64,000 bases of DNA from Vitrella brassicaformis CCMP3155 (Eukaryota; Protista; Chromerida): positions 62,001 to 126,000 of the forward strand of contig CDMY01001000.1 in assembly GCA_001179505.1 (NCBI GenBank), written 5' to 3'. Below, piece by piece: positions 2,648-62,850 of this stretch. The stretch's first letter is position 1. Each line of letters begins with the position of its first letter. The notes beneath the pieces are model-generated. The model did not search any database. It saw only the letters and a list, made by a program, of their open reading frames with translations, and was not told the origin of the DNA. Made by a program: the position numbers and the translations under genes.

Positions 2648-4356
2648 ATGAACAGTGACAGCTTGACCACGCAATGCCCTGAGCGAGCCATCCTCAACCA
2701 CTTCCAAAGGCCTGCCGCTATCCTCTGTGAGAGCCTTAAGCCGCTGCAGCAAGAAATCGCGGCGACCAAGGAGAAGACGGCTCAGCTCAAGACCAAACAC
2801 CGCATCGCTGACCTAGCAGCAGCCTGCGGCAACAAGGAGCTGCTGTTGAATGTGGGCGGCAGTGAGTGGTGCGTCAAGCGGCAGCACATGACTCAAGGGG
2901 AGGGCGTCGAGAACACTCTGCTGGCCGTGCTCTTCTCTGGCAAGTTCGACAACCGACTCATCAGGGACGACAAGCAGCGGGTGTTCTTGGATGTCGACTC
3001 GGAGGCCTTCAAGACCGTCCACAAGGCCATCCTGGAGGCGAGAGCCGTCCAGCAGGCCGCTCGAAAGGGCGGGCGGGGGAGAAACGCGGTCTCTTGTCTG
3101 CTGACCGAGGCCGACACGCGTGGACACAAGGGTACGCACTCACACACACGCACACACACGCACGCACACACGTGGGCAGCCAGGAAAGTCAGTCGCCTGC
3201 AGTGTATGGCCTGAGTCTGTCTGTATGTGCGGGTATATACAGGATTGCATGACTTCTGGGTCAAGAAGCTTCTCGCGCCACACGATATCGAGGGCGATCG
3301 CACAAAGTGCCGCGAGAGGGAGCCATCAGTGACGGCAGAGGGCATCGGCGAGGAGGCGGGGGAGCTCGTCAGTGCGCTCAACGACGTCCTCAAGGCCTAC
3401 AGTGACAAGAGGAGCAGCCTCGAGGCAGAGCTGCGGACCGAGAAGATGCGAGACGAGCATCTCAACACCGAATTAGAGGTGAGCGAGAGGCAATCACTCA
3501 CCGGAGCTGCCCCATGGAATCCATGCCATGCATTCGCTTGTGGTCTGATTGTCAGCTTGTGAGCTCGTTCCTGGCGCCCCTGGATGGCGATGACCCCGTC
3601 CTCTCTGTCGATGTCTGCGGCCAGACCATTTCGACGTGTCAGTCGACAATCGACGCCATGACCGACGAGATGGCACTCAAGCGACGCAACACTCAATCAC
3701 TGTGAGTGGCCTGACCGCACTGCAGAAGACGCAGCAAGCGAATTATACCCAGACAAATGCACCTAAGGTGTTGTGTGTCAATCACTCAGTTGGGGCAGCT
3801 CAGTCCACGACGTCCCCCCCGACCACATGAGCCGGCTCATCGACCACCACCGCCGCAAACGACACGGCGCCTCGCCCGCCGAGGCCAACGTGCCGCTGCA
3901 GATGGACAACGCCCGAGAGCAGGCGGCCTTCGATGTCAACGCGGCCATGTACGGCGTTGTCAAGACCGGCACACCACACGGCGCGCAGCCAACCAGGTAC
4001 GCAGATGGAGAGAACTAGGAGGACCGGTGTTGCGCCATCGGTTGTCTTTCCTTTCGCTTTGCAGTAACGGTGGGTTCACTGTCACATCTGGCGTGCGCTA
4101 TCGCATCGTCACGCCCGGCAAAGGTAACGTGCCGGGGGCCAACCAGACCGTCAAGTACGACGAGATTTGGTGGTCTGATGGGTTTGACGGCAACGACAAA
4201 GCCTACGATGAGCGTGGGAAGGTCCTTCGCGTGTCGGATTGGAATGGCTGGTGGCGTGAGGCAGTGCTGTCGATGCGCATTGGGGAGGTGAGGCAGATCA
4301 TCTTGCCTGGTGCATCCGCCCGCTACGTTCAGCTGCGCTTGGTCAGCATAGTGTAG
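2648..4356 (+). CDS. BTB/POZ (KCTD-type) + coiled-coil protein ending in a divergent FKBP-like cassette; 5 exons
   Basis: Exons 2648-3131, 3243-3478, 3556-3701, ~3791-3995 and 4065-4356 join in frame. BTB motif LLLNVGGSEWCVKRQHM..TLLAVLFSGKFDNRLIRDDKQRVFLDVDSEAFK. The last exon encodes SGVRYRIVTPGKGNVP..GWWREAVLSMRIGEVRQIILP..YVQLRLVSIV. Confidence 0.75.
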
Positions 4357-5445
4357 AGAGAATATGATGTGCCCGTCACCCACTCCCTGGGGGCTGTCTG
4401 CCTGGGTCCCTCGATGTTCAGTGAGGAGCGAATGGTTCTTACCTGGCGTGTACGACTGGCTTGTGTGTGTGTGTGTGTGTGTGTCGCTTTCCTACTTGAC
4501 CCCCCACACACACACGTGTGTCCCGTGTGAGCGCGTGAACGTTGCGGCGTCCATATTTGTGTGGGCGGGCGTGTCGCCCCTCCTCTTGTCACCGATGCCC
4601 CGCCCCTTGGCTGTCTGGTCGTCTTTTTCGTGACCGTCGTGTGTGTTGTCTGAGTGGCTGTGTTGCCGCTCTCTGATACGAGGGATGAGCCGTGTCGGGC
4701 GGGGATGTGTAGATACGCATTTATCACAAGTGTATAGAGAGGAGAGGGGGCTGGAAGCGGCGGCGGGGTCGGTCAAGTAGCCTTGTGCAACATGTTTGTG
4801 TCCGTGTCGCCTCTCTCTTCGGGGTCCCCCGTTGCATCCCCGATTGTGTGCATTGCGTCGGTTTTGGTCGGAGGATTGAGTGTGTTGTAGCTTTTGTCAG
4901 CCGTGTCAGTATGTCGGTGTGTGTCACGATGCATCGTGCGACGTGTGAGGCGGTGGATTGATCTTTCTCACTGTTTTGATGGCTGTGTGCCGTTTCTCTC
5001 TCTGTGGTGACTGGGCTATCTGGCAGTCGGTGGGACGCTCACAGCCTCTTTTTGAGTGTCCATGTGTGTGCCCGGTGTGTGGTGTGAAGACAGAGGGCAG
5101 CGCAGAAAAGGCCTTTTTTCCCTTCCTGTCGCGCCTTCTGTGGTGCATCCATCCACCTATTGGCTGTCGGCGGTCAGTCGCTGAATGGAGCGAGATATGT
5201 GCCAGAGACTTTGCCTGGTGCTGCGTGTGTCTATTGATCCCATTCGTGTGTGGTGTGGATGGCAAAAGGAGATGTGTATGGGTTGACTCTCCCTTTCAAT
5301 GTGTCGACTCTCTGCGTCTGTCTGTCTGTGTCTGTCTGTCTGTCTGTGTGAGAGAGACCTGATTGCGACGCGGCCGAGTTGGTGAACGAATTGACTTCGC
5401 AACGTATCTGGTCCGTTTGCCCTCCCCTCTCTCTTAAATGGGTCA
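4357..5445 (+). repeat. Non-coding flank co-duplicated with FKBP-like cassettes; homologous to 21600-22200 (inverted) and in part to 9740-10100 and 44345-44570
   Basis: Shared blocks: cactcacagcctcttt; gtgcccggtgtgtggtgtga(a/c)gacagagggcagc..aaggcc; and gcgacgcggccgagttggtgaacgaattgacttcgcaacgtatctggtccgtttgccctcccctctctct, whose reverse complement lies at ~21603-21690. Confidence 0.75.
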
Positions 5446-6401
5446 ATAGTCAGTGTCCCCTGACACGTTAAATGACACACTCGTCAGTCAGTCAGTCAGT
5501 CAATCAACCACATCACACAAGACACAGACACAGTTAGGTCAGAATAGACTCACATAACATTAAGGCAGGCATGCAGGCGCAGTCAGTGAGGTGACCACAG
5601 ACCGGGTCAATGCGACAAATGGACACCACAGACACACACACGGGGCTGCATTGCTGGACAGTACAGGGATGACGACAGACAGACAGACAGACAGACAGAC
5701 ACACAGCCCGCCAGCCCGCCAGTCATCCAGTCACACAACCACACACACATACGCACTGCGCATCCGGACGTCGAGGTCCTTCCATCCACTTACAGAGAGC
5801 CTTGCTGGCACCGGCCCCACACGCATCCATCGGCAGCAGCGTCTCAAGAAGCCAACCGATAAACAAGCCACATCACCCCCTCTTGCTGTCGTGAAGCAAA
5901 TCAGCACCGACAGCCTATGCGGCTTCGCGATGAAGGTCATGGTGGCCAGCCGTAGGCAGGGGCCGAGGTCCTGCCGCTGCTGGTGGTTACACCCAAAGCA
6001 CTGCATCAGGCAGACAGACAGACAGACGGACGTGCGCGGATGTTTTCATGGCTGCATGCAGCGTTTTTCTAGACACCTCTTTTCTACGGGGTCGTTCGCA
6101 ATCTCTATGCTGTCGGGGCACATGATCTGCTTGACGTGCTCCTCCCAATGCGGCGCCGCTGGCCGGCGGCCACTATGTAGAAACCGCCGCGTGCGTCGAC
6201 GAAGGCCTCATGACCGAAGAACAGACCCACAAATGCCTCCCTGTCGGCCATCGCCTTCACAAGACCCTGCACACACACAACACACATCATGCTGTGAATG
6301 GTGCATCCTGGGATGCGCCCGGGATGCGCTCTTTCTGTCGTTTTCTCACCTGTGGCGGTGTTGTGGGTCTTTTCTCTTCACAAGGCAGGACAGATCTCTC
6401 G

Positions 6402-6525: not shown

Positions 6526-7217
6526 GTGGGAGCAGCAGTGGTTTCAGGAAGACCCTAGCGATCTGCGTGCTTGGTTGAGTGACCCCGAAGAGAGTCAAAC
6601 AGGTGAGGACACCAAGGAAGGCGTCAGAGCCACCAGCCAGGCACAGATCTGAAGTCGGATGTCATCCATGTCGCCGCCCTGGCGTGTTGTTCTCGTGCAG
6701 TTTGTCCGAGCGTTGCGTAGCTGTAGAGGCTTCTGTGGTTCGAAGCAGACCCCTTTTTGACAGATCACTTGCTGCCACACGCAGAGGTCAGGAAATGCAC
6801 ACAGGGGCTGCAGCACTCTGTGTGTGCACGAGGGGAGATGCGAATTGATTGTTGTTCGACTGGTGTGGCTGTGCAGGCTGGAGTGCCGTCGTGGTGTAGG
6901 CAGACAGTCAAACAGGTGAGAGTGCTTCAGTGAATTAATTCAAAGAGGTCGAGCTGTTTGTGGGTGTGCTTGTGTGATGGGTGCAGGGTTGGTTGTTCTG
7001 ATTGCTGTGACTCGTGCACTCGCCCACGATGGATGGCGCTGAAGCCGTAAGCAAAGACAGAGCGCATCAACATGATCACTTCACCCAATGAGCCTGCCTT
7101 TCGATACGTACACATTCTGTGTGCAGGCTGCTGCTGCCGCTGCCCCTATCGACGTGTCAGGTGACTGCACACCTGATGGGTGACTGGCTGCGTGAACGCA
7201 AGATTCCTTGTTTGCAG

Positions 7218-9738
7218 GCACGGACGAGTGGTCTTGAGGCGTCGAGCGCGTTCAGGGGACCGTCATCGACACGGAGCGGACCTGGCCGCAGCTCAAGAAG
7301 GCCAGCAAGGGAGCTGTGGACCAAGCACCTCCTGGGCTTCTCGATGTCAAGAACTTCGATGGAGAACACTACTACTGTCTGGCCCTGCCAATCAAGCTGG
7401 TGGGGAGTGTGGACATCTGTGTGTGCACCGGCATGATCAGTCGCCTGTGTGTATCACTGTGTGTGTGTGTGTGTGTGTGTCGTCAGCAGGACCGTCAGGG
7501 TGGCACTTCGGTGGATCACCTCACTGTGGTTGTGGCCAGAGAGCTTCGCGGCAAAGTGACCGACGAGCAGATGAAGATCATCATCTACGACATGCTGACG
7601 CGCGACGACACCGAGCTGATTAAGACTCAGGAGATCCTGGACGAGCATCACCCTCTCCACAGAAGTGCCTCAGAGCGAGCAAAGGACGGATACGCCTACA
7701 TGGCTCTCGCGAAGCACGCCATACCAAGACACACAGCCATCGGTAGGCGGCTGACGTTGTGAGGAAGGGGTGTCGGTGCATAGGTGTGTGTCTTCTTTCT
7801 TAGGCCTGTACGGTGGATCGCTGGACCTGACGACAAGCAGGCAACGCAAGCCGGACAACTACAACCGATTCTACATTTATGACGTGGGTGCGTACCAGAC
7901 AAAAAAGGGCAACAACGTGTTTGAGCTGGATGGCTTTAAATTCAGAAGTGCTACCGGTAAGTCGGAATAGGTCATTGGTAAGTACCACTGGTAAGTCAGT
8001 CAGTCAGGCAGACAGGCAGGCAGGATCTTCTTAAGATGAGTCGCTCAGTGTCTTCCTCTGTGTGTCTGTCTGATGTCTGCTTCGTTCAGGCATGATGAAT
8101 GACCCGCGTGGCATGACGCGCATGAGGGGGAAGAAAGTTAACGTGGTGGCTCAGCCTTTTGAGCTGTTCGGCGTCCCCTGCATCAGCCACATCGCACTCA
8201 GGGACATCGACAAGCACGAGGTACTCACACACGACACCCACACACTGATCAAAAGACGCATGATCGATCGCCTAACAATCGCTTGGTCGCCTCACAGGAG
8301 GTTTTGGTGAACTACGGGGAGACCTTCTGGGGGAGTCATGACTGGAAGGCTCACCAGGAGAAGAAGGTAGGTTGGTCCACACCTATTACAAGCCCGCACA
8401 TCGGTGTTTTGTCTTCTCTCTGACTCATTCAGTTGCGGCACGAAATGGAGGAGTTGCATGAGCTGAGAGAACGACTCCAGCTGCTATCTCGTGTCAAGCA
8501 AGAAAGAGATACTGCAAGTCGTGAGAGAGATGGTACGTGGTCTATTCCGGTGCCGACCGATCATTCTGTGAAATTGTCTGTGCGCAGATTTGGAACAGGG
8601 GGTGGCTGACAAGGAAGAGCAGATTGCGGCTCTGGAGCAGCAGCTGGAGCAGTTGGCGCAGCTGCAGCGCCCCGCCAAGAGGTCTATTGGCGTCGGCCCC
8701 GAAGGTACAGAGGCTCTCTGCAGTCAATTCATGTGTGGCTGCTGACGTCTCGTCTTTCGCACGTAGATGTGTTACCTGACGGTGATGCCACCACCTTCAA
8801 GAAACGACGTCAGGATGAGCACAATGGGCCACAGCCGCCACCACCACGAGCAGGAGAGGGAGGGGCCAGCAATGGCGAGAAGGGCAGCATTCCTATGGGC
8901 TTCATGCGCTATCCGAGTGGCGCGTACCACAAGGTGGTGCAGGAGAGCAGCGGCAGAGTGCCGACACCCAGCGACCGCGTCAGGTTCGACGAGATCGGGT
9001 GGGATGATGGATTCGACGGCCGGGACGAAGTATTCTATGGCCGTGGGCTGGTGGGTCGTGTGTCTGATTTGCCTGAGTGGGAGCGTGAGGCGGTGCGTCG
9101 ATGAGGGAGGGCGAGACGAGGCAAATCATACAACCACCCGGAGTCTACGTTCAGCTGCGGTTGATCAGCATAGAGTAGGAGAGAGTACGTGTGGGCGGCT
9201 GTGAGTGTGTCACATACTCGTGTCTGTATGTGTGTCAGTGTGGCCAGTGGTGGCGGTGCGCCGGTGGGGACAGCAGCTGCCGGCACTGCTGGACCGCAGC
9301 CGAGCGGCACGCAGCAGCCGGCCATCAACACCACCGCAGCACATCCCCCCAGGTTCAAAGGGCAAAGGAGGACGGACGAAACAGACCTCGCCGTCTGTCA
9401 TGTTTGGTCCCTTCCTTTGCAGCGACAGTGATGGCTTCACTGTGAACGCATTAGGCAATCTGTATCGCGTGGTGCAGGAGGGCACCGGCAGAGTGCCGAC
9501 AGTCAACGACCAATACGTCGAGTACGACTGGCTTTCGTGGCGTGATGCATTCGACGGCCAGGACATAATCGACGATGCCCGTGGGGTGGTGGAGTGTGTG
9601 TCTGATCTGAATGTGTCTTATCGGTGTCAGTGGCTGAGTGAGGCATTGCTGTCAATGAGGGAGGGGGAAGTCAGGCAGATCAGACAACCAGGCTTTCCAC
9701 CCGCTTACGTTCAGCTGCGGTTGGTTAGCATAGAGTAG
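7218..9738 (+). pseudogene. SET-domain + coiled-coil + two FKBP-like cassettes; apparently disrupted, 5' end not located
   Basis: SET-like motifs lie on successive exons: YMALAKHAIPRHTAIG|LYGG, GMMNDPRG..VNVVAQPF..ISHIALRDIDKHE|EVLVNYGETFW. Coiled-coil exons at 8433-8704. FKBP-like cassette in exon 8767-9174 has a 1-nt deletion near 9096 (gcg gtg c-g tcg atg). A linker exon at 9239-9352 precedes the second cassette at 9423-9738. A possible in-frame TGA lies at 7235-7237. Confidence 0.6.
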
Positions 9739-11151
9739 GACAGAGTCCACACACACATGGGGGCGGCTGTGTGTGTCACACACCCATGTGTGTGGTCGGG
9801 GGCTCTTCACTTGTTGACTGGCTGCCTGTGTGCCTCGGCTGTTGAGCGAAGGAGGGAATGAGCTGTCTGTTTGTCGCAGCAGCTATCTGGGTGGACCATG
9901 GCGTGGATGTGTGTGTGCGTATCGCCTCTGTTTCCTTCACTGTCTGAGTGTCTGTCTGTCTGCCATGACTGAAGGAGAGGAGTGAGTGTTGTCTCTGTGT
10001 GCGTGTGCCGGCTGTCATGTGTGAAGACAGAGGGCAGCGCAGAAGAGGCCCTTTTGTCTGCGACAGAGGAAAGGCGCTCACCATCGTCACGTGTGTGGAT
10101 GCATTGAGCAGACCATGACGCCCTTCTGCGTCCTCCAATCTGCCTGCCTGCCTGTCTGTCTGCCTTTGTGACCAGTGGACAACACATTTAGTTATGATTG
10201 ATCGCCTCCTTGACAGTGAAATAGCGCGCCATTCAGTCTGTGCCACATCAATCACCCCATCCCAGCACACGAACCCCGCCCACAGCATCATGCTACATAT
10301 AGCTGAGCGTCGATCGATCCGCCATTCGGTCGCCTGGTGTCACGACTGGTCAATAATGGAAGACCACACAGCCACCCATGGCACGGCAGCCGCACACCAG
10401 GAGTGGGTGTCCGGCTGCGATATCACGCGTGACGGCATGGCGGCCCATCAGTCAAAACCACTGGCACACAGCCGCGTCAAGCGACACATACATAGGTCAC
10501 GCACTGCCCCCCCGCCCCCCGGCCCTACTTACTCGCCAAAAATCAATCATTCTGCCGACCTCTGTCTCTCCCTGTCTGTCTGTCTGTCTGTCTGATTCCT
10601 TTACTATGCACAGTGATCCGTCCGCAGGCTGAGCTGATGAGGAAAAATCTCTGTAGTCTTGCCCAAAGGCAACAGCAGCCGGGCTGGCGAAACACAAACA
10701 GACACACACACACACACACACGCTATGCTGGCATGAAAGAGAGAACACGAGAGCGATAGGCAGAAGCGATAAGCAAACATGCACACAGACGGAGGGAGGG
10801 GAGGGAGGTAGGGAAACAAAACAAGACAATGGATCATGGTCAAGAAGCAAGCAGGAAAACCGCTGCAGGCAGGCAGGTAGATAAGAGAGAGACGTGTCTG
10901 CGGCCCGGTCTCTTCTCTGTCCATCTGTATGTCTGTCTGTCTGTCTGTCTGTCTGCATGCCGGATGAAAAATCGCTCCATCCATCGGCCACAGAGAGATG
11001 CAAAGAACAGTCAGTCCCCCATCCGCCCACCCGCCCGTCGACTACACAGACCACTCGTACACTGCACACCACCCCAACATCCCTCGGGAGCACACAAAAA
11101 CCCCAAAAATCACTCCACGTCACTCGCTCTGTCTGTCTTGGGTGGGCTAGA

Positions 11152-14468: not shown

Positions 14469-14504
<36 letters not shown>

Positions 14505-16975: not shown

Positions 16976-17012
<37 letters not shown>

Positions 17013-19145: not shown

Positions 19146-19183
<38 letters not shown>

Positions 19184-22199: not shown

Positions 22200-23070
22200 C
22201 TACTCTATGCTGATCAAACGCAGCTCAATGTAGGGGCCATATCCTCCTGGCGCTATGATTTGCCTGACCTCCCCCTCCCGCATCGACAGCACCGCCTCAC
22301 GCTCACACTCATACAGATCAGACACACGATACACCTCCCCACGGATATCGGCCCATTTCTCCCGGCCGTCGAATGCATCAAACCACGAGATGAGGTCGAC
22401 CTTGACGGGGTCCTCGGGTGTCGGCACTCTGCCGGCGCCCTCCTGCACCACTCGATGGCGGGCGCCAGATGGGTAGCGAATGAGGCCATTGCCGTTGCTG
22501 TTGGCGGCTGACGACGAGCCCTCTTGCCGCTGACGCAGGGTGGCGCCGCCGCCACTGACCACACCCACACTGACCGACACACACACACACACACACACAA
22601 GCACGATAAGAGCCCATTGTTTGTCGGTGAAGTGTCCTCTTACTTCTCATGCGGCAGGACGCCCTTGGGCAGCAGTGATCTGCGCCCGTTTCTGTCCTTG
22701 GTGTAGAAGTTGACGCTCGTGCGGCAGATCTCGAGTGGCAGATAGATGCGCTCTCTGGGACGGTCGGGCACCAACGCGTTGAGCTCGTAGAAATACTCCC
22801 CCGGACGGGAGGCGTCGTCCAACACATTGCGGCTGAACTCCAGCAGCCCGACGTCAACCACGTCACTCATGACTGATGGCTGCACACATGCGCACACATC
22901 AGAGAGTCACAGATCTGTCTGCACTGTGTTTCTTGTACTGCTGTTTCGTACCAGTGCACTGATGGGCCACTCGAGCTCCCTTCCTGTGATCCTCTTTGCG
23001 AGCTCAACATGCTCTGCGAGCTTGGCTCGAAGACTTGAAAAACCGGATTCCGGGAACGGGAGCAGATAAG
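22200..23070 (-). CDS. Unknown N-terminal exons spliced (phase 2) to an intact FKBP-like cassette exon 22569-22200; start not located
   Basis: Exon ..LEICRTSVNFYTKDRNGRRSLLPKGVLPHE aa|gtaag; acceptor gtcag|t gtg ggt gives NVGVVSGGGATLRQRQEG..RYPSGARHRVVQEGAGRVPT..ISWFDAFDGREK..EAVLSMREGEVRQIIAP..YIELRLISIE. Confidence 0.55.
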
Positions 23071-34538: not shown

Positions 34539-36355
34539 ATGGCTGTGTGGCTGTTTGCCGTCCTCTTGGTGCCCTGGGCGGCTGTCGATGGGTTCGTAGG
34601 ACCACCACTCACACCACTGCAGCCGCAGACGCCGCCAACGTCACGCATCAACCGACTCAGAGGACGTAAGCCAACACTAACACACACAGACAGATCTCGC
34701 GGTTGGGTGAGCATCACTCGTGAATTGATGTGTGTGTTTGTGTGTTTGTTTGTCTGTGAGTCTGTGCAGGGCGGTGCGTTGCCCTTATGAGCAGTGGACC
34801 GGTTGGTCTGTTGGATGGCTGTGCCGTTTATGAGGACGGCAAGGGTGGCTATGCGTTGGAGGCGGCTGGCCAGCGGTTGCCCATCGAGCCATCATTCCAC
34901 TCACACATCAAGTTCTGCATCAAACAGCACCGGTGAGCGACCTACAGACACAGCCAGGTCTGCTTTCAACCCCGACTTGGTGTTGGTTGTCAGGTCGGCT
35001 GTCGGCAGCGAGAAAGGCCAAGAGGAGAAGGACTCCGACGGCGATCAGCCACCACCGGCGGCCGGAGCAAGGGCAACAGCGGATGAAGGGGCGGCGGCCG
35101 GCAAAGGTGACGACACGACTGACGATGGCCTCGTGGGACATTCATTGGACCCTCGACTTCGTTACAAGGTGGTGCATCAGGGCACTGGCAATGCGCCCAC
35201 AATGAACTCGACAGTCAAAGTGGGCCTTACTGTGTGGCGGGATGCCTTCCACGGCAACCACACCTTGTGCGATGTCCGTGTGGCGGAGTTTCCTGTGCCG
35301 GATATTGCTGATATTAGTGATATTGCTGATATTGGTGACGAATTCCGTGACGAGTTGCTGTCGATGCGTGAGGGCGAGGTGAGGCGATACTTCCTACCAG
35401 TCAACGGGAATGAGGGCGTCTTTGTGGAAGCTCGGTTGGTCAGCGTCTTAGATGGGACCCGGTGAGCGCAGAAGCACACAGGTCGACGGGTGTGGTGCAG
35501 CCCTGTCTTTCAGGCCGCCTCCTGCCGGCGTCGGGAGAGGGTTGTTCAAGGGTGGCTTTCCAGGTCCACCCCCAGCTGGCGCAACTTATGAGGTCGTCAG
35601 GGAGGGCACCGGCAATGTGCCTACACTCAACTCAACCGTCAAACTGGGCCTCACTGTCTGGCGGGATGCCTTCGATGGTAACGACACCTTCTTCGATGCT
35701 CGGGAGTGGGAGAGTTCTGTGCTTGTGGATGATGAGTTGCTGTCGATGCGTGAGGGCGAGATGAGGCGAGCCGTCCTGCCGGCCGACGACCATGAGGGCG
35801 CCTTTGGGGAATGTCGGTTAGTCAGCGTCTCCAATGGGGCCCGGTGAGCGCACAAAGACAACACTGAGTGGGTGCTGCCCCTCTCTGCTACTCTTCTCGT
35901 CTAATACATTGTCGGTGTGTCCTTTCAGGCCGCCCCCTGCCGGCCATGAGAGAAGCCGCCCACCCTCACCGCCCGCAGCAGCAGGAGCAGCAGCAGCAGC
36001 AGTTGACGAGACAGCGGACAGCAAAGACGGCACCAGCGGTGATGTGCTCTTTCGACTCTACCCCTCTGGCGCCTATCATCAAGTGGTGCGACCGGGCAGT
36101 GGACCTAAACCGACACGCAACCAGCGGATCAAGGTCGACCGCATCAGGTGGAATGACGACTTCGATGGAGAGGACAAGATAGGCGAGTACCGTGGGGATG
36201 TGAGGCGTGTGTCTGAGTGGGATGAGTGGGTCCAGGAGGCCCTCACGGACATGCGTGTGGGTGAGGTGCGGTGCGTCATCGCCCCAGGCAGACTGAGACC
36301 AAATTTTGGAACGAACACTATGTACGCTGAGTACACGCTGGTGGCCATTTTGTGA
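34539..36355 (+). CDS. Signal+transit-peptide protein: small VGLx-G domain followed by three tandem FKBP-like cassettes
   Basis: MAVWLFAVLLVPWAAVDGF then a P/T/R-rich segment. Exon ~34770-34932 (PVGLLDGCAVYEDGKGGYALEAAGQRLPIEPSFHSHIK). Cassette exons 34994-35461, 35514-35843 and 35929-36355 are joined by phase-2 GT-AG introns (cg|gtgagc twice). Confidence 0.7.
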
Positions 36356-41631: not shown

Positions 41632-41881
41632 ATGAACGATGCTGTGGTGTGTGGCGCAATTGCGGCTCTGCCACAATGTGGCGTGTGTTTTGAGGACTAC
41701 CACCACGAGGATGCCCAGTGGCACAGGCAGCCCCAGGTGCTGCGATGCGGTGAGTGAGAAACACACCCACCCAGGCAGACAGACAGAGGGAGGGAGGGAA
41801 TCACCGGCATGACTCGTGATCGGTTTGGTGTGTGTGTCCTGCGGCCACTCCGTCAGGTCACTCCTTCTGCGCGGCGGTACC

Positions 41882-41913
<32 letters not shown>

Positions 41914-44422
41914 GCACTCATTCCTGGAATGAGGGGCTCACGTGTGGCACCTTGCTGTCCGTCTCTGTGTGTGTGTCTGCAGTGTGTCCGGGGCCTCCTT
42001 GACAAGAGCCGTCGTCGGATAGCCGTCTGCCCGACATGCAGGTACGCAGACCAAGCCACACTAATATCGGTGGTTTTGTGCCCACGTGTCTGTGGCCGTT
42101 TCTGTCGATCAGGCGCGAGACCTCTCAGTCGGATGTGCACGTCAACTACGACCTCCGTGACATCGTGCAGCAGCTGCGGACGGCCACTGCGGCAGCACCG
42201 GCGCCAGCATGCGGCAACACGATACCCACACCCTCGGCGCCACCTGCTGTCCCTCCGAGTGGCCAACACGTACCCCTCACGGCTCGCCAGCGGCAGGAGG
42301 CGGACGACTATGCCTTGGCGGTCCGGCTATCGAACGACATCAATGCCATAGAGCCGCCGAGGCAAATGTGAGCAGCACCTCTCCGTCACTCACCTCAAGC
42401 AGGATAGTCATTGGCTTTGTGTCTGTCTGGGTGTGTTTGCCATCGGCAGTCTCGCCAATGGCGGCGCCGCCCCTTTGCGCCTTCGGACTGGCACATCGCC
42501 ATCTGGTGTGCAATATGAGGTGGTGCAGGAGGGCACCGGCAGGACGCCCACACGCCTCGACACCGTCTGGGTCGACGAGATCGGGTGGTTTGACGGATTC
42601 GACGGCCGGGACAAAGCATTCGATAGACGTGGGAAGGTCCGTCGTCTGTCTGGTCTGTATGGGTGGAAGCGCGAGGCATTGCTGTCGATGAGGGAGGGGG
42701 AGATGAGACAAATCAAAGTGCCAGACGGAGTCCGCTATGTTCAGCTGCGGTTAATCAGCATAGAGTAGGAAAGAGTGCACACTCACACACACACACGTCA
42801 TTGCCTTTATGTGTGCGTGTGTGTGCCATCGGCAGTCTCACCAATGGCGGTGGCGCCCTCCCTCCGTCGCAACCGCATTGGCCAACTCCTTTGCGCCGCT
42901 GGACTGGCACATTGCCGTCTGGCGTGCAATATGAGGTCGTCGCGCTCGGCACCGGCAGGACGCCCACACGCACCGACACCGTCAAGGTCGACTGGATTCA
43001 GTGGTTTGATGGATTCGATGGCCGGGACAAAGCATTCGATGGGCGTGGGCTGGTGTATCGCGTGTCTCATCGGGATGGGTGGGAGCGTGAGGCGTTGCTG
43101 TCGATGATGGAGGGGGAGGTGAGGCACATCACAGACGGAGTCCGCTACGTTAAGCTGCGGTTGATCAGCATAGAGTAAGAGAGAGTCCACACACATACAC
43201 ACACATGGTTGTTAGTGTCACCCATTCATCTGTGGTCCGGGGCTCTTCCCTTTGTGCCCGTCTGACAGGAGCAAGGCTGCGCCGGTGAGGACATCTGCCG
43301 GCGGACCCCAGCCGAGCGGCACGCAGCAACAGCAGCCGGCCGCCAACACCACTGCAGCACAGCGGGCCAGGTGGGTGCAGCGGAGAAGGGACCAAATGGT
43401 TATTGGCTTTGTGTGTGTGTGTGTGTGCGCAATCGGCAGTCTCGCCAATGGCGGTGGCGGCCTCCCTCCGTCGCCACCGCATTGGCCAACTCCTTCGCGC
43501 CTTCGGACTGGCACATTGCCATCTGGTGAGCAATATGAGGTGGTGGAGGAGGGCACCGGCAGAGTGCCCAAAGCCAACGACACCGTCAAGTACGACTGGA
43601 TTTGGTGGCGTCACGCATTCGAGGGCCTGGACAAAGCCGACCATTGCCGTGGGGCGGTGCGTCGTGTGTCTGATCTGTATGGGTGGGAGCGTGGGGCGAT
43701 GCTGTCGATGCGTGAAGGGGAGACGAGGCAGATCATACTGCCAGACGGAGTCAGTCATGTTCAGCTGCGGTTGATCAGCATAGAGTAAGAGAGTCCACAC
43801 ACGCACACACACATGGTTGTTAGTGTCACCCATTGATGTGTGTGCCCCGGGGCTCTTCCCTCTGTGCCCGTCTGACAGGAGCAGCGCTACGCCAGTGAGG
43901 ACATCTGCCAGCAGACCGCAGCCGAGTGGCACGCAACAGCAGCAGCAAGCTACCAGCAACAACACAGGACTGCGGGCCAGGTACAGAGGAGAAGGGACAG
44001 AATACACCTCACCGTCTGCCATGTTTGCTCCCTTCATTTGCAGTGACAGCGATGGCTTCACTGTGACCCCGTTGGGTGCTCGGCATCGCATTGTCACGCC
44101 CGGCATCGGCAGAACGCCCGCACCCTGCGACCGCGTCACGGTCGACCTCATTGGCTGGGGGGATGGATTTGGTGGCCAGCGCAAAGCCTACGATTTCCAT
44201 GGGCTGGTGGCTCGTGTGTCTGATCGGCTTGAGTGGGAGCGTGAGGCATTGCTGTCGATGCGAGAAGGGGAGACGAGGCAGATCGTACTGCCACCCGGAT
44301 CTGTCCGCTACGTTCAGCTGCGTTTGATTAGCATAGTGCAGAAGAGAGTGCACACCCACACGTGGGGGCGGCTATGTCTGCCACCCATTCGTGTGTGTGC
44401 CCGGGGGCTCTTCACTCGTTGA
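41632..44422 (+). CDS. C3HC4 RING E3 ligase-like protein + Ala/Pro linker + UIM-like helix + four tandem FKBP-like cassettes
   Basis: The RING CGVCFEDY..QPQVLRC|GHSFCAA|CVRGLL..VCPTCR is assembled through a 20-nt microexon (~41858-41877). The helix QEADDYALAVRLS follows. Cassette exons start at 42450, 42836, 43440 and 44044, and 102-nt linker exons lie at 43269-43370 and 43879-43980. All cassette and linker junctions are phase 2. Confidence 0.75.
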
Positions 44423-45627: not shown

Positions 45628-47180
45628 CTACTCTAAGATGCTGACCAAAGGCACTTGAGTGTAGGGGGCTGAAAACTCGGCTGGAGCTATGATTCGTCTG
45701 ACCTCCCCCACACGCATCGACAGGAGCGCCTCACGGAACCACCCACCCCAGTCAGACACACGACTCACCCACCCAGCGCGACCAAAGCATTTGTCCCGGC
45801 CGTTGAATGCGTCATACCAGCCAACGTAGTCGAACTTGACGCGACGGTTGAGTGTGGGCACTCTGCCCCTAGAGTACGTGACGATGCGATGTCGCACACC
45901 AGATGGCATCACAGTGAAGCCGTCAGCATCAACAGGTAGTGCCTCAACACCGCTGCCGATAGCCACACTGACACGCAGCCACATGGAAACACAATACCAA
46001 AACTTGAGCGAATACATCAATGAACCAATCCTGTCTGGTCGCCAACCTGTGGCTGGTCGCCACAAGTGCTTGCTGGAAGCTCGGAGAGACACCAGGAGGT
46101 GCCGGGGGTGTCATGTTGTTTCCACCAGCATTGATTCCGTAGGACAGGCGCAGCGCTAAGGCATAGTCGTCCGCCTCCTGCCGCTGGCGAGCCGTGAGGG
46201 GTGCTTGTTGTTGGCCACTCGGAGGGACAGCAGGTGGTGCCGCGTGTGCCGTGTTGGTTGGTGCAGGTGCTGCCGCAGTGGCCGTCCGCACCTGCTGCGG
46301 ATGTCGCGGAGGTCGTAAATGGTGCGCACATCAGCCTCTGCAGTCTCGCGCCTGATTGACAGCCCAAAAAATACACACATGAGAGGAGAGAGCCAAGGGT
46401 GGCTTGCCTGCACAATCCACAGACAGCTGCGCGGCGGTCATGAGGATGGTTGCGAATGAGCTCCCGAACACACTGTACGCAGCAACCACACGACATGAGA
46501 CACTTGCTCACAAAGGAGAAAAGCAGTCTGTGCGTACCTCCCTGCAGCCCGAGTGACCTGGTAGACACAGACAGACAGATTGGTGACACCCATCCTCCCA
46601 CCCAGCCCCCACTAACCGCATTCGAGCGATTGAGGATCCCCGTTGGTACCCACAGAGCGCAAACACACAAAACACGGGGGAAAGTGCAACCTCACGCGAG
46701 ATCTGCAGCAACGGATACGGGAGTCAAGGATCCACCTATATATGAGTGTCACCCCGTGGAAGCCTCCTCCCCTGATCGGGCATTTCTTAAAACGTCCCAA
46801 ATGTGCCGAAAAATATTTAGAAATCGGCAAGTAGGCGAAAAATATTTAAAACAAATGAGGAGAAATTCTAAGAACTTTAGGCGATGACCGGGGGAGGGGG
46901 GGGCGGAAATGTTATTTAGAGGCTTGTTTTAGGTATTTCGAGGCTTGTTTCAGCCATTGAAAACACGTTTAAACCCTCTTCACTTCACCACCTCCAAACC
47001 AGCCATCTCCATTTTAAAACGACCCAAACCCCGCAAAAAATCGAAGGAGTAATTTTAAACAATTGCAAATAAAAACAAAAAAGGGGAGTAATTTTAAAAA
47101 ATTTCAAATACAAGGGAGGAGGCTTCCACGGGGTGATGAGTGTCTGTCGCTCACCCCACTGCCAGTGACACTATCGACAT
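45628..47180 (-). pseudogene. Paralogue of the 41632 RING gene with one FKBP-like cassette; 1-nt deletion near 46303 and a MITE in intron 1
   Basis: MSIVSLAVG|SRVRLHFPPCFVCLRS..LECG|HSGCRE|CVRELI..VCGLCR|RETAEADVRTIYDLRDI, then a frameshift (atc c-g cag versus atc gtg cag in the paralogue), then QEADDYALALRLS. Cassette exon 45967-45628. Confidence 0.65.
46750..47135. mobile_element. Non-autonomous DNA transposon (MITE), 386 bp, hAT-like signature
   Basis: Perfect 22-bp TIRs CACCCCGTGGAAGCCTCCTCCC (46750-46771 and 47114-47135). Identical 8-bp flanking direct repeats ATGAGTGT at 46742-46749 and 47136-47143. The interior is markedly AT-rich with no ORF. Confidence 0.9.
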
Positions 47181-47728
47181 CAGAAATGACCGGAAAGAGG
47201 AGAATTCGAAGGAAGGAATAAGGGTACGCTATTCCTGCTGGAAGTTTCGCCTTTCTAAGCTTGCAAAGTTGGACGCTGCTAACGTCAGGAAAGGCCTCAG
47301 ACAGCCGACACTGACTCAGATCCCAGCGAAAACTCATTCGGGCAGGGAGGCAAGCTGGTAGAAACAAGCATCGTTCGCGCACAAGCGCCTGAAGGGAGAT
47401 TACGGTTGGTTCATTGCAGCCGATCGACAGAACTATACATATGCATGTGAGAGAAACGAAGACACACGACAACAACCCCCTCATAGACAGACAGACGCTC
47501 ACTTAATGGCCTCCTTCCCCTCCCACCATACAGACCACACACCATCAACAATCCCTTACAGCACACCGACACCATGAGTGGCCAATCACACAGACAGCAC
47601 ATTTCCTCCTTCCCTCAAAACCAAAGCGCACAGTCAGCCAGGCAATGAGTGAAGAGCCCCCGGCCACACACATCAATGTGTGACACACACAGCCGCCCCC
47701 ACTCATTTGTGTGTGTGTGCACTCTCTC

Positions 47729-48350
47729 CTACTCTATGCTGATCAAACGCAGCTGAACGTAGGGGGGATCATACAAGTCGGGCACTTTGATCTGCCTCAC
47801 CTCCCCCTCTCTCATCGACATCAATGCTTCACGCTCCCACTCATTCAGATCAGACACACTGAACACCGCCCCAAGGAAATCGAGTGCTGTGTCCTGGCCC
47901 ACGAATGCATCACACCACACAACCCAGTCGATTTTGACGGTGTCGTTGAGTGTGGGCGTCCTGCCGGTGCCCTCCTGCACCACTCGATGGCGGGCACCGG
48001 ATGGGTAGCGAATGAACGTGGCGTCGCTGCTGCTGGCTGCTGACGACGAGCCCTCCTCCTGCTGACAGTGTGGCGCCGTCGCCATTGGTCACACCCACAC
48101 TGGCAACGAGAAAACATACTTTCACGATTCAGCCATTTGTGTGTGTTGGCCCCATCCTGCTTGTGGTGAGGCCTACGTGAGCTGTCTGAGGTCGTCTTTG
48201 ATGTCGGCCGCCAGTCTGATGTCGCCGTAGTGCTCCGGACGGATGGCCATCTGCTGCCCTTTGGCCGGGCGGCAGAAGCGCCACAACCACCCGGTGTTGC
48301 GGCCCCAAAAGAGACCAACCAGCCGATCACTCACTGCGACAAGAGGCTGC
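47729..48350 (-). pseudogene. Small VGLF-G domain exon + FKBP-like cassette (48099-47729); 2-nt deletion in the linker
   Basis: LVGLFWGRN..GQQMAIRPEHYGDIRLAADIKDDLRQL ac|gtagg. Relative to the 22569 copy, aca ctg cgt cag has become aca ctg t cag. The cassette itself is intact (RYPSGARHRVVQEGTG..YVQLRLISIE). Confidence 0.6.
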
Positions 48351-48745
48351 TGATGATGTGACTGCATACACACCCAGAGGACAGAGCGTGAGGGAGGACA
48401 GAGAGATCCCATCACTGCATCGATGACTTTGTCTGTTCTACATGTCATCCGTCGTTTCCCTGTGACCTCCTTTGAGGCGCTTGTTTACGTCAGCTTGCCT
48501 CCTTGCCTGAGCATCGACAGCACACGAGCAGACACACAAAGAATGGATTTTCTGCCGAGCTCTGGGCCAGTGTCGGCTGTCTGAGGCCTTTCCTGACCCA
48601 CGGGATCCGAAAATGATGGAGGAGAGGGAGGAAGCTTCGCTGGGTTTGCGAGCTTAGAGAAGGCGAGCCGAGATCCCAGCGGCTGTTGCGCAGAGGAGAG
48701 AGAGGCTACCAACATACAGATCCGTTCCATGCGGCGTGTTGCAGT

Positions 48746-54223: not shown

Positions 54224-55289
54224 CTACACTATGCGGATCAAACGCAGCTGGCGGTAACGCGTCGTCCGGTAACGGGGGCCATCAGATTCGATTGGCAGTA
54301 TGATCTGCCTGACTTCCCCCTCGCGCATCGGCAGCATCGCCTCACGGAACAACGCACCCCGATCAGACACACGAATCACCAGCCCACGGCGATCGCATGC
54401 TTTGTCCCGGCCGTCGAACGCATCATACCACCCGATGTAGTCGTACTCGACGGTGTCGTTGAGTGTTGGCGCTCTGCCGGTGCCGGGCGTGACGATGCGA
54501 TACCGAAGACCAGATGGCATCACAGTGAAGCCGTCAGCATCAACAGGCAGCGCCTCAACACCGCTGCCGATAGCCACACTGACACACAAACATAGAATGC
54601 ACCAGTCTTTATGGTCGGTTTGCTCGCCGTGCGTACGTGTGGGTGTTTGCCATCCGCCCGGCCGTCGGCCGCTGGGGAATCCCACGCAGCCTTTATGCAG
54701 CCAGCCAGCAGACAACAGAGAGAGATGGCATATCGCTGTCGGCAATGCCTTGGTTTGATTGGTTACCTGGGGTCCTGCTCATTGCCCCCTGCCGTGTACA
54801 GCGGTATGAGGCTGTCGACCGTCACGCCCGCCTTACACACCGGACAGTCCCTTTTGCCGCGACCGACCAGCCAGCCGTGCAGACACGCCCAGCAATACTG
54901 CATGGCACACCAACACACAACACACACGCACACACACCCGATGTGGGCCTCGTGCAGGCAGCTTTTGTGTCTTGCGCCTCGTGCATCGTGGCTCCTTTGC
55001 TGTGGGTGCATGTTCTCACGAGGTGTCCGCATCGCGTGACGACGGGCTCCGTGGCCTGCTCGAGGCAGATCCGGCAGGCGAAAGGCGACGTATCGGGTGT
55101 GCCGCCGCCATTCGATGTCGCGGTGGGAAGCGGAGCCACTGGAAGCGGAGCCGACGAATACAAACCCATACACAGAGCTAAAATGGAAACGACGCTAACT
55201 TCGTCTGGGGTGGTCAGAAAGCCAAGCGTTGGCGTCGTTGCACTACGGTGGCTTCGCGATCCAAGCTCGCGTCGTGAGGAAGTGTTCAT
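54224..55289 (-). CDS. RNF5/RMA1-type C3HC4 RING fused to an FKBP-like cassette in place of the usual membrane anchor
   Basis: [67 protein letters not shown]..H ac|gtacgc ... gtcag|t gtg gct atc (phase 2). Cassette exon 54578-54224. Confidence 0.75.
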
Positions 55290-62272: not shown

Positions 62273-62689
62273 AGTGAGTGAGTGGAAGAGACACATGCAG
62301 TGCAAGCGGACGACAGCATGGATGAGAGACAGAACAGACACCTGCGATGAATCGATTCTTGGTTCTGTCTGAATCTGCGTGGGAGGGAGATATTTGAGTG
62401 AGGGACGGACGGAGGGACACTTCAAAGCCCCATTTTGAATTAGACAGGGGATGGGAGGCACAGCCCCACACACGAATGGCAGAGGCAGAACAGAGGAGGA
62501 CAGATGAGCCCACGAGACCAGCCAGGACCGATCAGCCAGCTGGTCAGGCGAGACAGACTCGAGGCAGACACACAAAACACAGCCGGCCGGTCAGTCGTCC
62601 AGACGGCCACACGCAGAGAGCGCGACCAACAAACAGACAGACAGACAGACAATGAGAAGAGAGAGGGGCGATGCACTCCCTCCTCTCCG

Positions 62690-62850
62690 ATCAAACCCGA
62701 TACACAGTCAGCCAGGCAAGAGGGAAGAGCCCCCGGCCACACACACGAGTTTATGACAAAAACAGCCACCCCCACATGTGTGTGTGTGTGGATTCTCTCC
62801 TACTCTATGCTGTACCAAACGCAGCTCAACGTAAGGGACGTAGCTGTCTG
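62690..62850 (-). repeat. 5'-truncated fragment of the FKBP-like cassette plus its conserved downstream flank
   Basis: Minus strand ccttacgttgagctgcgtttggtacagcatagagtaggagagaatccacacac..ggccgggggctcttccctcttgcctggctgactgtg matches the cassette ends at 22200, 47729 and 54224. The sequence upstream of ~62850 is unrelated. Confidence 0.75.

What the first reader, a model, noticed from the sequence alone, without database searches (positions are those of the whole stretch)
4065..62850. A promiscuous FKBP-fold exon cassette (15 copies + 1 fragment) grafted onto RING, BTB, SET and other domains
Seen in sequence: a ~95-110 aa module with consensus F..xPSGxRYxVVxEGTGRxPTxNDTVxxDxIxWxDxFDGxDKxxDxRGxVxRVSDxxxWxREAxLSMREGEVRQIxxP(x)nYVQLRLxSIE. 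Copies lie at 4065, ~8890, 9423, 22569(-), 33999(-), 34994, 35514, 35929, 42450, 42836, 43440, 44044, 45967(-), 48099(-), 54578(-), plus a fragment at 62800(-). It splices in frame to a KCTD-type BTB, a SET domain, two paralogous C3HC4 RINGs, an RNF5-type RING, a small unnamed domain and an orphan exon. Established knowledge: the motif order (SG..Y..l..G.G..P...d.V, FD, W.E.l..M..GE, terminal EL-like strand) is FKBP-type. RING and BTB are ubiquitin-ligase components and SET is a methyltransferase. Inference: this is a combinatorial system in which a diversified FKBP-fold recognition domain is paired with different protein-modifying domains. I know of no described family like it.
Basis: partly seen in the sequence, partly recalled or inferred. 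Interest (0 to 1): 0.9.

Follow-up and report, generated by a model that had tools for sequence, protein, structure and literature searches.

The report
Shuffled, fast-evolving FKBP-like exon cassette family
The alga Vitrella has copied one small gene piece, a stripped-down and probably enzyme-dead FKBP domain, onto many unrelated genes (ubiquitin-ligase parts among them), and its former binding pocket changes faster than neutral DNA, as expected for a target-recognition module; nothing like it turned up in the papers I could search.

Summary
The window is Vitrella brassicaformis CCMP3155, contig CDMY01001000.1, record position = window + 62000. Two copies (8898+, 33757-) are one base short in this assembly.

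The module is a real but degenerate FKBP fold: AlphaFold pLDDT 89, Foldseek TM 0.77-0.81 to Mip/FKBP structures, profile E 1e-6. It lacks the 80s flap and most pocket residues, and single copies fall below Pfam's threshold.

New here:
- The exon is symmetric, with phase 2 at both ends. Its stop codon sits inside a 5' splice site. RNA contigs and two transcript contigs show it used as an internal exon in one place and as the last exon in another. Cassettes are therefore concatenated; for example one 677-aa protein has a RING and four cassettes.
- Codon models reject near-neutrality (2dlnL 64.8; about 18% of sites at omega ~4). Selected sites include the equivalents of FKBP12 Y26, F36, D37, I56 and F99.
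- Every family-type hit carrying an organism name is Vitrella.
- Partners are broader than protein-modifying domains. Most are small unnamed modules, and one carries a signal-peptide-like leader.

The substrate-receptor function is inferred. This scan already noted the family on neighbouring DNA.

The parts
2648..4356 (+). Gene A: BTB (KCTD-like, weak) + coiled coil + conserved middle region + one cassette (exon 4065-4356, module 4069-4353).
   Evidence: Collinear tblastn alignment to Vitrella proteins P0165, P0028 and P0040, which their source names KCTD-type BTB proteins. Pfam BTB_2 scores only E 0.035.
7214..9738 (+). Gene B: SET-like + coiled coil + cassette 8898-9172 (1-nt deletion, frameshift) + linker exon 9239-9352 + terminal cassette (exon 9423-9738).
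   Evidence: P0060 and P0012 map here. Pfam SET scores 20.3 bits against a cut-off of 22.4. The deletion is seen. Transcript contig L003 joins the end of cassette 8898 at GA|GTAG to the linker exon and then to cassette 9433, with 474 nt of unspliced 3' UTR.
22203..22870 (-). Gene C: unnamed N-terminal module (22646-22870) + one cassette (22206-22469).
   Evidence: 84% identity to residues 1-76 of P0032, followed by the cassette.
33654..34298 (-). Gene D: small N-module + degenerate cassette (33757-33906), one base short at the MREGE motif.
34539..36355 (+). Gene E: signal-peptide-like exon (34539-34666) + small N-module + three concatenated cassettes (35136, 35587, 36065).
   Evidence: Official model P0007 (456 aa, 3 matched stretches) starts at 34787. 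The upstream exon matches the N-termini of P0003, P0004 and P0005.
41632..44422 (+). Gene F: C3HC4 RING (four exons, including a 20-nt microexon at 41857-41876) + four cassettes (exons 42450-42764, 42836-43174, 43440-43784, 44044-44422) + two linker exons (43269-43370, 43879-43980).
   Evidence: My GT-AG reconstruction gives 677 aa, the length of the official model. The last four exons are confirmed by RNA contig joints and by transcript contig L001, which is 100% identical.
45628..47371 (-). Gene G: paralogous C3HC4 RING + one cassette (45634-45921). Public annotation splits it into a 140-aa and a 110-aa gene.
   Evidence: P0166 residues 26-63 and 73-271 align to 46505-46398 and 46377-45637.
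47729..48355 (-). Gene H: small N-module + one cassette (47735-48001).
   Evidence: P0031 aligns over its whole length; P0084 and P0081 also align. P0009 is a truncated model.
54224..55169 (-). Gene I: RNF5-type RING + one cassette (54227-54532).
   Evidence: The official model is P0011 (229 aa), with RING Pfam hits including zf-C3HC4_3 and zf-C3HC4.
62702..62851 (-). Solo 3' fragment of a cassette: the last beta strand plus the conserved downstream flank.
   Evidence: It is 86% identical to the cassette end and flank of transcript L006.
9733..9850 (+). Example of the conserved ~110-nt downstream flank. The stop codon lies inside a 5' splice site (GA|GTAGGA). CA repeats and a pyrimidine tract follow, then CTGAC and the acceptor position: CTGACAG in the two internal copies shown, a T in place of that A in most terminal copies.

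Best explanation
This is a Vitrella-specific, heavily duplicated exon cassette. It encodes a minimal FKBP-fold domain of about 95 aa: five strands and one helix. The 80s flap is deleted, the 40s and 50s loops are shortened, and the catalytic/FK506 pocket residues are lost.

The exon has phase 2 at both ends. Its last codons (…ATA GAG TAG/TAA, or …CGG TGA) place the stop codon inside a consensus 5' splice site (GA|GTAGGA, G|GTGAGC). If the site is spliced, the reading frame runs on into a linker exon or the next cassette. If not, translation stops one codon later, and the former intron becomes the 3' UTR.

This lets DNA-level duplication of exon plus intron do two things: build tandem arrays, and add the cassette behind any gene whose last coding exon ends in phase 2. 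The window holds nine such genes. Their partners are three RINGs of two types, a BTB-like domain, a SET-like domain, and four small unnamed N-modules, one with a secretory-type leader.

About 40% of codons are strongly conserved and form the fold framework. About 15-18% evolve at omega ~4. These lie on alternate residues of strands 2, 3 and 5 and in the loops that formed the FKBP pocket.

Inference: the domain no longer isomerises prolines. It is a diversified ligand- or protein-binding module that supplies target specificity to whatever it is fused to, including single-chain RING E3s and a possible Cullin-3 adaptor.
For: Shown:
- Copies and their coordinates.
- FKBP homology and fold (E 1e-4, E 1e-6, pLDDT 89, TM 0.77-0.81).
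- Loss of the flap and pocket, by alignment to solved FKBPs and to the nearest algal FKBPs.
- The stop codon lies within a splice donor in 14 of the 15 copies.
- That site is spliced at cassettes 8898 and 43513, and read as a stop with unspliced downstream sequence at 9433.
- The 677-aa RING + 4-cassette reading frame has every intron after RING exon 3 in phase 2, and its length equals the official model.
- Partner exons. Transcript-derived paralogs carry RING + cassette (P0163, P0166, P0168); a BTB + cassette paralog is P0152, in P0052's cluster.
- Selection. Whole-domain pairwise dN/dS is about 0.6-1.5 among the 40 lowest-dS pairs. My M0 likelihood reproduces IQ-TREE's (-2819.83). M2a against M1a gives 2dlnL 64.8, p 8e-15, omega2 4.0 at 18% of sites. 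The result persists without the loop columns and the longest branch (53.9, p 2e-12).
- Codon positions 1 and 2 differ by 0.30-0.31. Four-fold sites differ by 0.21 and the noncoding flank by 0.18. The exon exceeds the flank in 28 of 28 pairs.
- 5 of the 8 alignable pocket equivalents are among the 17 selected sites (p 0.004).
- Distribution. 24 of the 30 representatives looked up are from Vitrella brassicaformis. Two more of the family type are unnamed transcriptome entries and one is an unnamed ENA contig. No family-type hit carries another organism's name. The two hits that do (a dinoflagellate, an uncultured bacterium) are ordinary FKBPs with the flap.
Against: - No ligand, interaction or activity has been measured, so the binding function is inferred from selection and architecture.
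- I could not see model coordinates. That the selected sites form one surface rests on sequence alignment to FKBP12 and Mip, and two alternative alignments exist for the 40s region.
- Site-model tests can be inflated by gene conversion among tandem copies and by saturation (tree length 8-12 substitutions per codon).
- Only 3 of the 9 genes here carry a clear E3 domain.
- One subgroup looks secreted or organelle-targeted, where ubiquitylation is irrelevant.
- Two copies are frameshifted, so some members may be decaying.
- The RING-to-first-cassette junction in this window is supported by the gene model and by a transcript of a paralog, not by a read across it.
Confidence: 0.62

Rival explanations
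1. The cassettes are still working FKBP-type prolyl isomerases or chaperone domains, as UniProt's automatic names ('peptidylprolyl isomerase') imply. The arrays would resemble multi-FKBP foldases.
For: The fold is FKBP. Multi-cassette proteins pass Pfam FKBP_C when their scores add up (P0003, 39 bits). The nearest outside relatives are ordinary single-domain algal FKBPs.
Against: Single cassettes score 13-15 bits against a cut-off of 21.1. The equivalents of Y26, F36, D37 and I56 are among the most variable positions, and that of V55 is also highly variable. The regions holding R42, F46 and the flap (Y82, H87, I90, I91) are deleted. Positive selection at the pocket positions is the opposite of what a conserved active site shows.
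Confidence: 0.08
2. It is a selfish or neutral repeat. Recent segmental and tandem duplications of an exon would be drifting towards pseudogenes, and dN/dS near 1 would simply reflect relaxed constraint.
For: Overall omega is 0.72. Two of the 15 copies are frameshifted (for 33757). A solo fragment (62813) and an orphan N-module exon (6079-6269) exist. The noncoding flanks are duplicated along with the exon.
Against: 13 of 15 copies keep open frames. Several columns are invariant across 74 domains (M69, E73, L92) and others nearly so (G8, G19, R75). The nearly neutral model M1a is rejected in favour of M2a. 33-40% of sites have omega ~0.1. The cassettes are transcribed and correctly spliced.
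Confidence: 0.1
3. The exon diverges faster than its flank for a reason other than selection for new binding specificities. Either the flank is itself under purifying selection as a splicing or 3'-end element, or gene conversion homogenises the flanks, or both.
For: The flank is conserved (p 0.18), less diverged than the exon (p 0.29) in 28 of 28 pairs. It contains splice signals: a donor, a pyrimidine tract and CTGAC(AG).
Against: Four-fold degenerate sites in unchanged codons (0.21) are close to the flank (0.18), so the flank behaves about neutrally and no hypermutation is needed. No conserved RNA structure was found. Codon positions 1 and 2 exceed both neutral measures.
Confidence: 0.15

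Closest known systems
Mip-type / algal organelle-targeted FKBPs (PF00254). The nearest sequences are single-domain FKBPs with a 'GWLDGFxG..KKFDSS' motif from a dinoflagellate (P0109) and from Parmales and other marine algae (P0146).
   Same: Same fold and recognisable homology: 56-62 bits to the family profile, and Foldseek TM ~0.8 to Legionella and Burkholderia Mip. The N-terminal 'SGxxYxVxxxGxG..P' and the helix 'W.EALL.M..GE.R' are shared.
   Different: The cassette lacks about 18-20 residues of the 80s flap and about 6 residues of the 40s loop. Its pocket residues are variable or deleted. It is an internal or terminal exon of multi-domain proteins, not a stand-alone enzyme with a targeting peptide.
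Catalytically inactive FKBP-like interaction domains (AIP/XAP2; also FKBP38 and FKBPL, from my own knowledge).
   Same: The FKBP fold is kept as a protein-interaction module without conventional PPIase activity. AIP appears among the weak profile hits (2lkn), and the FKBP38 domain among the fold hits (3ey6, 2awg).
   Different: Those are single, conserved orthologs with an intact or enlarged flap. Here the domain has dozens of paralogs, is flap-less, is shuffled as an exon, and is under diversifying selection.
E3 families with hypervariable substrate-recognition domains: TRIM RING-B30.2/SPRY proteins such as TRIM5alpha, and the MATH-BTB and F-box expansions of nematodes and plants (from my own knowledge).
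   Same: A RING or BTB at the N-terminus, a C-terminal binding domain, lineage-specific tandem expansion, and positive selection concentrated on a binding surface.
   Different: The variable domain is an FKBP fold, not SPRY, MATH or LRR. It occurs in arrays of up to six. It is also fused to non-E3 partners (SET-like, HMG, SLBP, CBM20, secretory-type leaders). No target or immune role is known.
PPIase-E3 fusions: PPIL2/Cyp60 (U-box + cyclophilin) and RanBP2 (SUMO E3 + cyclophilin) (from my own knowledge).
   Same: A prolyl-isomerase-fold domain on the same chain as a ubiquitin-like-modifier ligase domain.
   Different: Those use the cyclophilin fold, are single conserved genes, and keep the active site.
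Accelerated evolution of venom genes (snake PLA2, conotoxins), where exons diverge faster than introns and UTRs (from my own knowledge).
   Same: The coding exon is more diverged than the adjacent noncoding DNA in every pair.
   Different: The organism, fold and genomic mechanism differ. Here the unit is a single shuffled exon.

Membership tests
FKBP-type PPIase domain (Pfam PF00254 FKBP_C) | FKBP fold: a five-stranded antiparallel sheet wrapped around a short helix. | tested here: met
   The AlphaFold2 model has pLDDT 89.1 and pTM 0.79, with elements E-E-E-H-E-E. Foldseek against the PDB gives Mip and FKBP domains at TM 0.77-0.81, E 4e-6, probability 1.00.
FKBP-type PPIase domain (Pfam PF00254 FKBP_C) | Sequence score above Pfam's gathering threshold (21.1 bits). 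| tested here: not met
   Of 10 single cassettes, 3 score 13.3-14.8 bits and 7 get no hit. Only 3 of 54 full-length family proteins pass at E 1e-3, through summed copies. Homology itself is supported by the profile against PDB sequences (E 1e-6).
FKBP-type PPIase domain (Pfam PF00254 FKBP_C) | Conserved pocket residues (FKBP12 Y26, F36, D37, R42, F46, V55, I56, W59, Y82, F99). | tested here: not met
   By alignment: Y26 = column 32, F36/D37 = columns 45/46, V55/I56 = columns 58/59, F99 = column 88. Their entropies are 2.8-3.7 bits. R42, F46 and Y82 fall in deleted stretches. Only the tryptophan (column 61) is largely kept.
FKBP-type PPIase domain (Pfam PF00254 FKBP_C) | The 80s loop (flap) between the fourth and last strands. 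| tested here: not met
   The family has 3-8 variable residues between the conserved P80 and the last strand. P0109, P0146 and Mip have about 20. Alignments to canonical FKBPs stop at profile position ~83.
FKBP-type PPIase domain (Pfam PF00254 FKBP_C) | Prolyl isomerase activity or macrolide binding. | not testable with these tools
   This needs recombinant protein.
RING-type E3 ubiquitin ligases | C3HC4 cross-brace Cys/His pattern recognised by RING profiles. | tested here: met
   Gene I (P0011) has precomputed hits to zf-C3HC4_3, zf-C3HC4 and zf-RING_2 at E 1e-5 or better. Gene F's translation shows CxxC…CxH…CxxC…CxxC across four exons, with weak RING hits on the official model. Gene G is a paralog of gene F.
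KCTD-type BTB (Pfam BTB_2) | Profile match above threshold. | tested here: inconclusive
   Window 2648-3100 scores E 0.035, 14.9 bits, against a cut-off of 21.4. Paralog P0165 scores 15.5 bits. UniProt's automatic name for the paralogs is 'Potassium channel tetramerisation-type BTB'.
SET-domain methyltransferases | Profile match above threshold. | tested here: inconclusive
   P0060 scores 20.3 bits against a cut-off of 22.4 (E 7.5e-4). P0012 scores 14.3 bits.
E3 adaptors with a positively selected substrate-recognition domain (TRIM-SPRY or MATH-BTB type; a functional analogy, not homology) | Excess nonsynonymous change concentrated on the presumed binding surface of the non-catalytic domain. 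| tested here: met
   M2a against M1a gives 2dlnL 64.8 and 53.9. Sites 32, 34, 36, 45, 48, 51, 53 and 59 have P > 0.9. Codon positions 1 and 2 exceed the four-fold sites and the flank.
E3 adaptors with a positively selected substrate-recognition domain (TRIM-SPRY or MATH-BTB type; a functional analogy, not homology) | Demonstrated substrate binding and ubiquitylation. | not testable with these tools
   No interaction data exist.

The most novel reading that the evidence does not exclude
The family is a germline-encoded recognition repertoire built on the FKBP fold, a protist counterpart of TRIM/SPRY or variable-receptor systems. Each array gene could produce a graded set of isoforms (partner + 1, 2, 3 … cassettes), because every cassette ends in a site that is both a stop codon and a splice donor. 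Splice choice would then set which binding specificities are displayed on a RING, a BTB or a secreted scaffold.
Probability: 0.2. Interest if true: 0.9.

Novelty: new variant of a known kind. Interest (0 to 1): 0.72.

Why it matters
FKBPs are textbook conserved enzymes and drug receptors. Here the same fold has lost its flap and pocket residues. It has been multiplied to at least 76 distinct family-type domains in public Vitrella protein sets, plus the 15 copies in this window. It has also been shuffled as a phase 2-2 exon onto RING, BTB-like, SET-like, HMG, SLBP, CBM20 and secretory-type partners, and it evolves under strong diversifying selection where the pocket used to be.

If the domain is a recognition module, three things follow:
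- It would be a new natural binding scaffold.
- It would be a new class of E3 substrate receptor in a close free-living relative of apicomplexan parasites.
- The stop codon inside a splice donor would be an unusually clear example of how one sequence feature makes an exon freely portable and stackable.

It also corrects public annotation: cassette-only gene models, a split RING + cassette gene, a missed signal-peptide-like exon, and the 'peptidylprolyl isomerase' names.

Tried and rejected
- Word-indexed protein searches returned few hits (2 and 11), so they could not give a census. The exhaustive profile search was used instead.
- P0060 could not be traced to a contig.
- P0162 and P0164 share an N-terminus but carry different cassettes, so I tested whether they are splice isoforms of one gene. 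Rejected: they map as two paralogs, with the N-exon 96% and the cassette 80% identical.
- I looked for a conserved RNA structure in the 3' flank. None was found: consensus energy -6.8 kcal/mol, no covariation.
- I considered hypermutation of the exon. Rejected: four-fold sites (0.21) are about as diverged as the flank (0.18).
- Fold of the commonest small N-module: the model is confident (pLDDT 83), but no PDB match is significant (best E 0.9). The best AlphaFold DB hits have no organism shown and are probably the genome's own proteins. It remains an orphan four-strand module.
- A blind enumeration of exon chains for gene F timed out. A guided one gave exactly 677 aa.
- The two 1-nt deletions and the RING-to-cassette-1 junction could therefore not be checked on reads.
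- I could not map the selected sites on 3-D coordinates, because the model's coordinates are not returned.

Full report
**Identity of the window.** A protein encoded at 34787-36352 (P0007) and one at 54224-55169 (P0011) are annotated products of Vitrella brassicaformis CCMP3155, assembly GCA_001179505.1, contig CDMY01001000.1. Record position = window position + 62000. G+C is 58% and there are five N gaps.

**Observation.** Thirteen intact copies align with 54% mean column identity. Invariant residues are V14, G19, P22, W35, F39, G41, M69, G72, E73, R75 and L91.

42450, 42836, 43440 and 44044 are exactly the exon starts I reconstruct.

Copy 8898 has a 1-nt deletion relative to three paralogs. 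By my reading of the bases, copy 33757 is one base short at the MREGE motif. Both are frameshifted in this assembly, and I could not check reads.

None of the cassette genes is read across an N gap. The 3' UTR of gene F reaches the gap edge at 45154/45155.

**Fold.**
- One module matches Burkholderia and Legionella Mip-type FKBPs by phmmer (E 1e-4).
- The 13-sequence profile does so at E 1e-6.
- AlphaFold2 gives pLDDT 89 and pTM 0.79.
- Foldseek returns only FKBP domains at the top (TM 0.77-0.81, probability 1.00).

Pfam's FKBP_C is not reached by single cassettes (13-15 bits against 21.1).

Alignments to canonical FKBPs end near profile position 83. Where FKBPs have the ~20-residue 80s flap, the family has 3-8 variable residues.

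The nearest outside sequences are single-domain algal FKBPs with N-terminal targeting-like leaders: a dinoflagellate (Apocalathium) and Parmales-type proteins. They score 56-62 bits. Against them the family also lacks about 6 residues of the 40s loop.

**Gene architecture.** Nearly every cassette ends …ATA GAG TAG/TAA GAG AGA GT… or …CGG TGA GCG. The stop codon therefore lies inside a consensus donor, GA|GTAGGA or G|GTGAGC. Acceptors leave one base before the first full codon, so both flanking introns are phase 2.

RNA evidence:
- A contig of run X1 joins 43540-43784 | 43879-43977 | 44041-44557 with GT..AG.
- Transcript contig L001 (JGI, 100% identical) has exons 43250-43370 | 43437-43785 | 43879-43980 | 44041-45154.
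- Transcript L003 starts with the last 14 nt of cassette 8898 spliced at GA|GTAG to a linker exon (9239-9352), and then to cassette 9433. The identical GAGTAG of cassette 9433 is left unspliced, followed by 474 nt of UTR.

The same sequence is thus used as a donor in internal copies and as a stop in terminal copies.

A guided GT-AG reconstruction of gene F gives ten exons and 677 aa, the length of the public model. It includes a 20-nt RING microexon, and every intron after RING exon 3 is phase 2. The partner's last exon also ends AT|GTGAGC, which reads ATG TGA if unspliced.

The ~110 nt downstream of each cassette is conserved. In the internal copies it is the intron, ending in a pyrimidine tract and CTGACAG. 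Most terminal copies keep it with a T in place of that A. The duplicated unit is therefore exon plus intron: DNA-level duplication, not retroposition.

**Partners.**

| Gene | Range and strand | Partner | Cassettes |
|---|---|---|---|
| A | 2648-4356 + | BTB-like (KCTD-type, weak) | 1 |
| B | 7214-9738 + | SET-like | 2 (first frameshifted) |
| C | 22203-22870 - | unnamed module | 1 |
| D | 33654-34298 - | small N-module | 1, degenerate |
| E | 34539-36355 + | signal-peptide-like exon + small N-module | 3 |
| F | 41632-44422 + | C3HC4 RING | 4 |
| G | 45628-47371 - | RING paralogous to F | 1 |
| H | 47729-48355 - | small N-module | 1 |
| I | 54224-55169 - | RNF5-type RING | 1 |

The public model of gene E omits the signal-peptide-like exon. 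Gene G is split into two genes in the public annotation.

BTB_2 and SET are below Pfam thresholds; the RINGs are clear.

Transcript-derived paralogs carry RING + cassette (P0163, P0166 and P0168). A BTB + cassette paralog is P0152, in P0052's cluster.

Across 54 family representatives, Pfam finds RING in 3, BTB_2 in 2, and SLBP, HMG box and SET in 1 each. The rest, about 45, have no Pfam-recognised partner domain.

The commonest partner is a ~45-aa four-strand module. Its model is confident, but no solved structure matches it significantly.

**Distribution.** The exhaustive profile search of 1.84 billion representatives gives 759 hits at E 1e-3 or better. About 59 of the top 150 match end to end at 60-148 bits per domain. 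The rest are ordinary multi-FKBP proteins at 15-35 bits per domain.

Of the 30 representatives looked up, 24 are from Vitrella brassicaformis. Two more of the family type are unnamed transcriptome entries and one is an unnamed ENA contig. The two that carry another organism's name (Apocalathium, an uncultured bacterium) are ordinary FKBPs with the flap.

Some public proteins show up to six matched stretches, of which four are end to end (P0003).

No paper in the searchable library mentions the family. The chromerid genome paper contains no 'FKBP', 'isomerase', 'RING' or 'BTB'.

**Evolution.** Whole-domain pairwise dN/dS is about 0.6-1.5 among the 40 lowest-dS pairs, although many columns are invariant.

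I wrote a codon-likelihood implementation. Its M0 value equals IQ-TREE's (-2819.83).
- M1a gives -2712.97 and M2a gives -2680.57.
- 2dlnL is 64.8 (p 8e-15).
- 33% of sites have omega 0.08, 49% have omega 1, and 18% have omega 4.0.
- Without the loop columns and the longest branch the test still gives 53.9 (p 2e-12), with the same sites.

Sites with P > 0.9 are profile columns 4, 27, 32, 34, 36, 45, 48, 51, 53, 59 and 84. In other words, they are alternate residues of strands 2 and 3 plus the loops.

By alignment, 32 = Y26, 45/46 = F36/D37, 59 = I56 and 88 = F99 of FKBP12. Five of the eight alignable pocket positions are in the selected set (hypergeometric p 0.004).

A model-free check agrees:
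- Codon positions 1, 2 and 3 differ by 0.30, 0.31 and 0.28.
- Four-fold sites in unchanged codons differ by 0.21.
- The noncoding flank differs by 0.18.
- The exon is more diverged than its flank in 28 of 28 pairs.

Caveats are gene conversion among tandem copies, saturation, and the fact that I could not inspect 3-D coordinates.

**Interpretation.** The architecture and the evolutionary pattern are shown. The function is inferred: a degenerate FKBP fold reused as a diversified binding module that gives specificity to its fusion partner.

The E3-receptor idea fits genes F, G and I (RINGs) and perhaps gene A. It cannot be the whole story, because most partners are unknown small modules and one subgroup looks secretory.

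**Earlier notes.** This scan has noted the family repeatedly in this genome (44 notes contain 'FKBP'). One followed-up finding lies just beyond this window (s1-231046). My tests were made independently on this window and agree with it.

Noticed in passing
window 41857-41876 (+): A 20-nt microexon encodes the 'HSFCAA' core of the RING in gene F, between introns of 107 and 106 nt. It is needed to reach the 677-aa frame.
   Followed up: partly
window 34539-34666 (+): This exon encodes a hydrophobic, signal-peptide-like N-terminus followed by Phe and a Ser/Thr/Pro/Arg-rich stretch. Its translation closely matches the N-termini of P0003, P0004 and P0005 printed. The public model of this gene (P0007) starts downstream and omits it. 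It suggests secretory or complex-plastid targeting for the multi-cassette subgroup.
   Followed up: partly
window 6079-6269 (-): An orphan copy of the small N-module exon, 77-83% identical to the start of P0045. No cassette was found downstream on that strand. It may be a gene remnant.
   Followed up: no
L005:6303-7875 compared with transcript L006: In a pair of paralogs the N-terminal exon is 96% identical, the cassette only 81% and the 3' UTR 88%. This points to cassette replacement, or to much faster change of the cassette than of the rest of the gene.
   Followed up: partly
window 42778-42798, 43188-43205, 43796-43813, 41784-41799, 44964: Short CA-rich stretches just downstream of cassettes have 5-16 times the local word depth in the two likely DNA runs, and many contigs break there. 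They are high-copy microsatellite-like repeats that fragment the assemblies.
   Followed up: no
window 40622-41327 (-): Three very short introns (45, 87 and 75 nt; CT..AC on the + strand) are confirmed by RNA contigs. They lie in the neighbouring methyltransferase gene, whose public model spans 39882-41408.
   Followed up: no
window 60006-62272 (+): A 550-aa gene has a T6SS_Tle1-like catalytic (phospholipase-type) domain hit. Next to it is a DUF2828/DUF7788 gene at 56937-59798 (-).
   Followed up: no
window 48755-53259 (+): A 1057-aa gene model with faint SGL/NHL hits spans the assembly gap at 51075-51374. Its reading frame across the gap is unverified.
   Followed up: no
window 45628-47371 (-): Public annotation calls the RING part (140 aa) and the cassette (110 aa) as two genes. 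Alignment to a transcript-derived paralog indicates one RING + cassette gene.
   Followed up: partly
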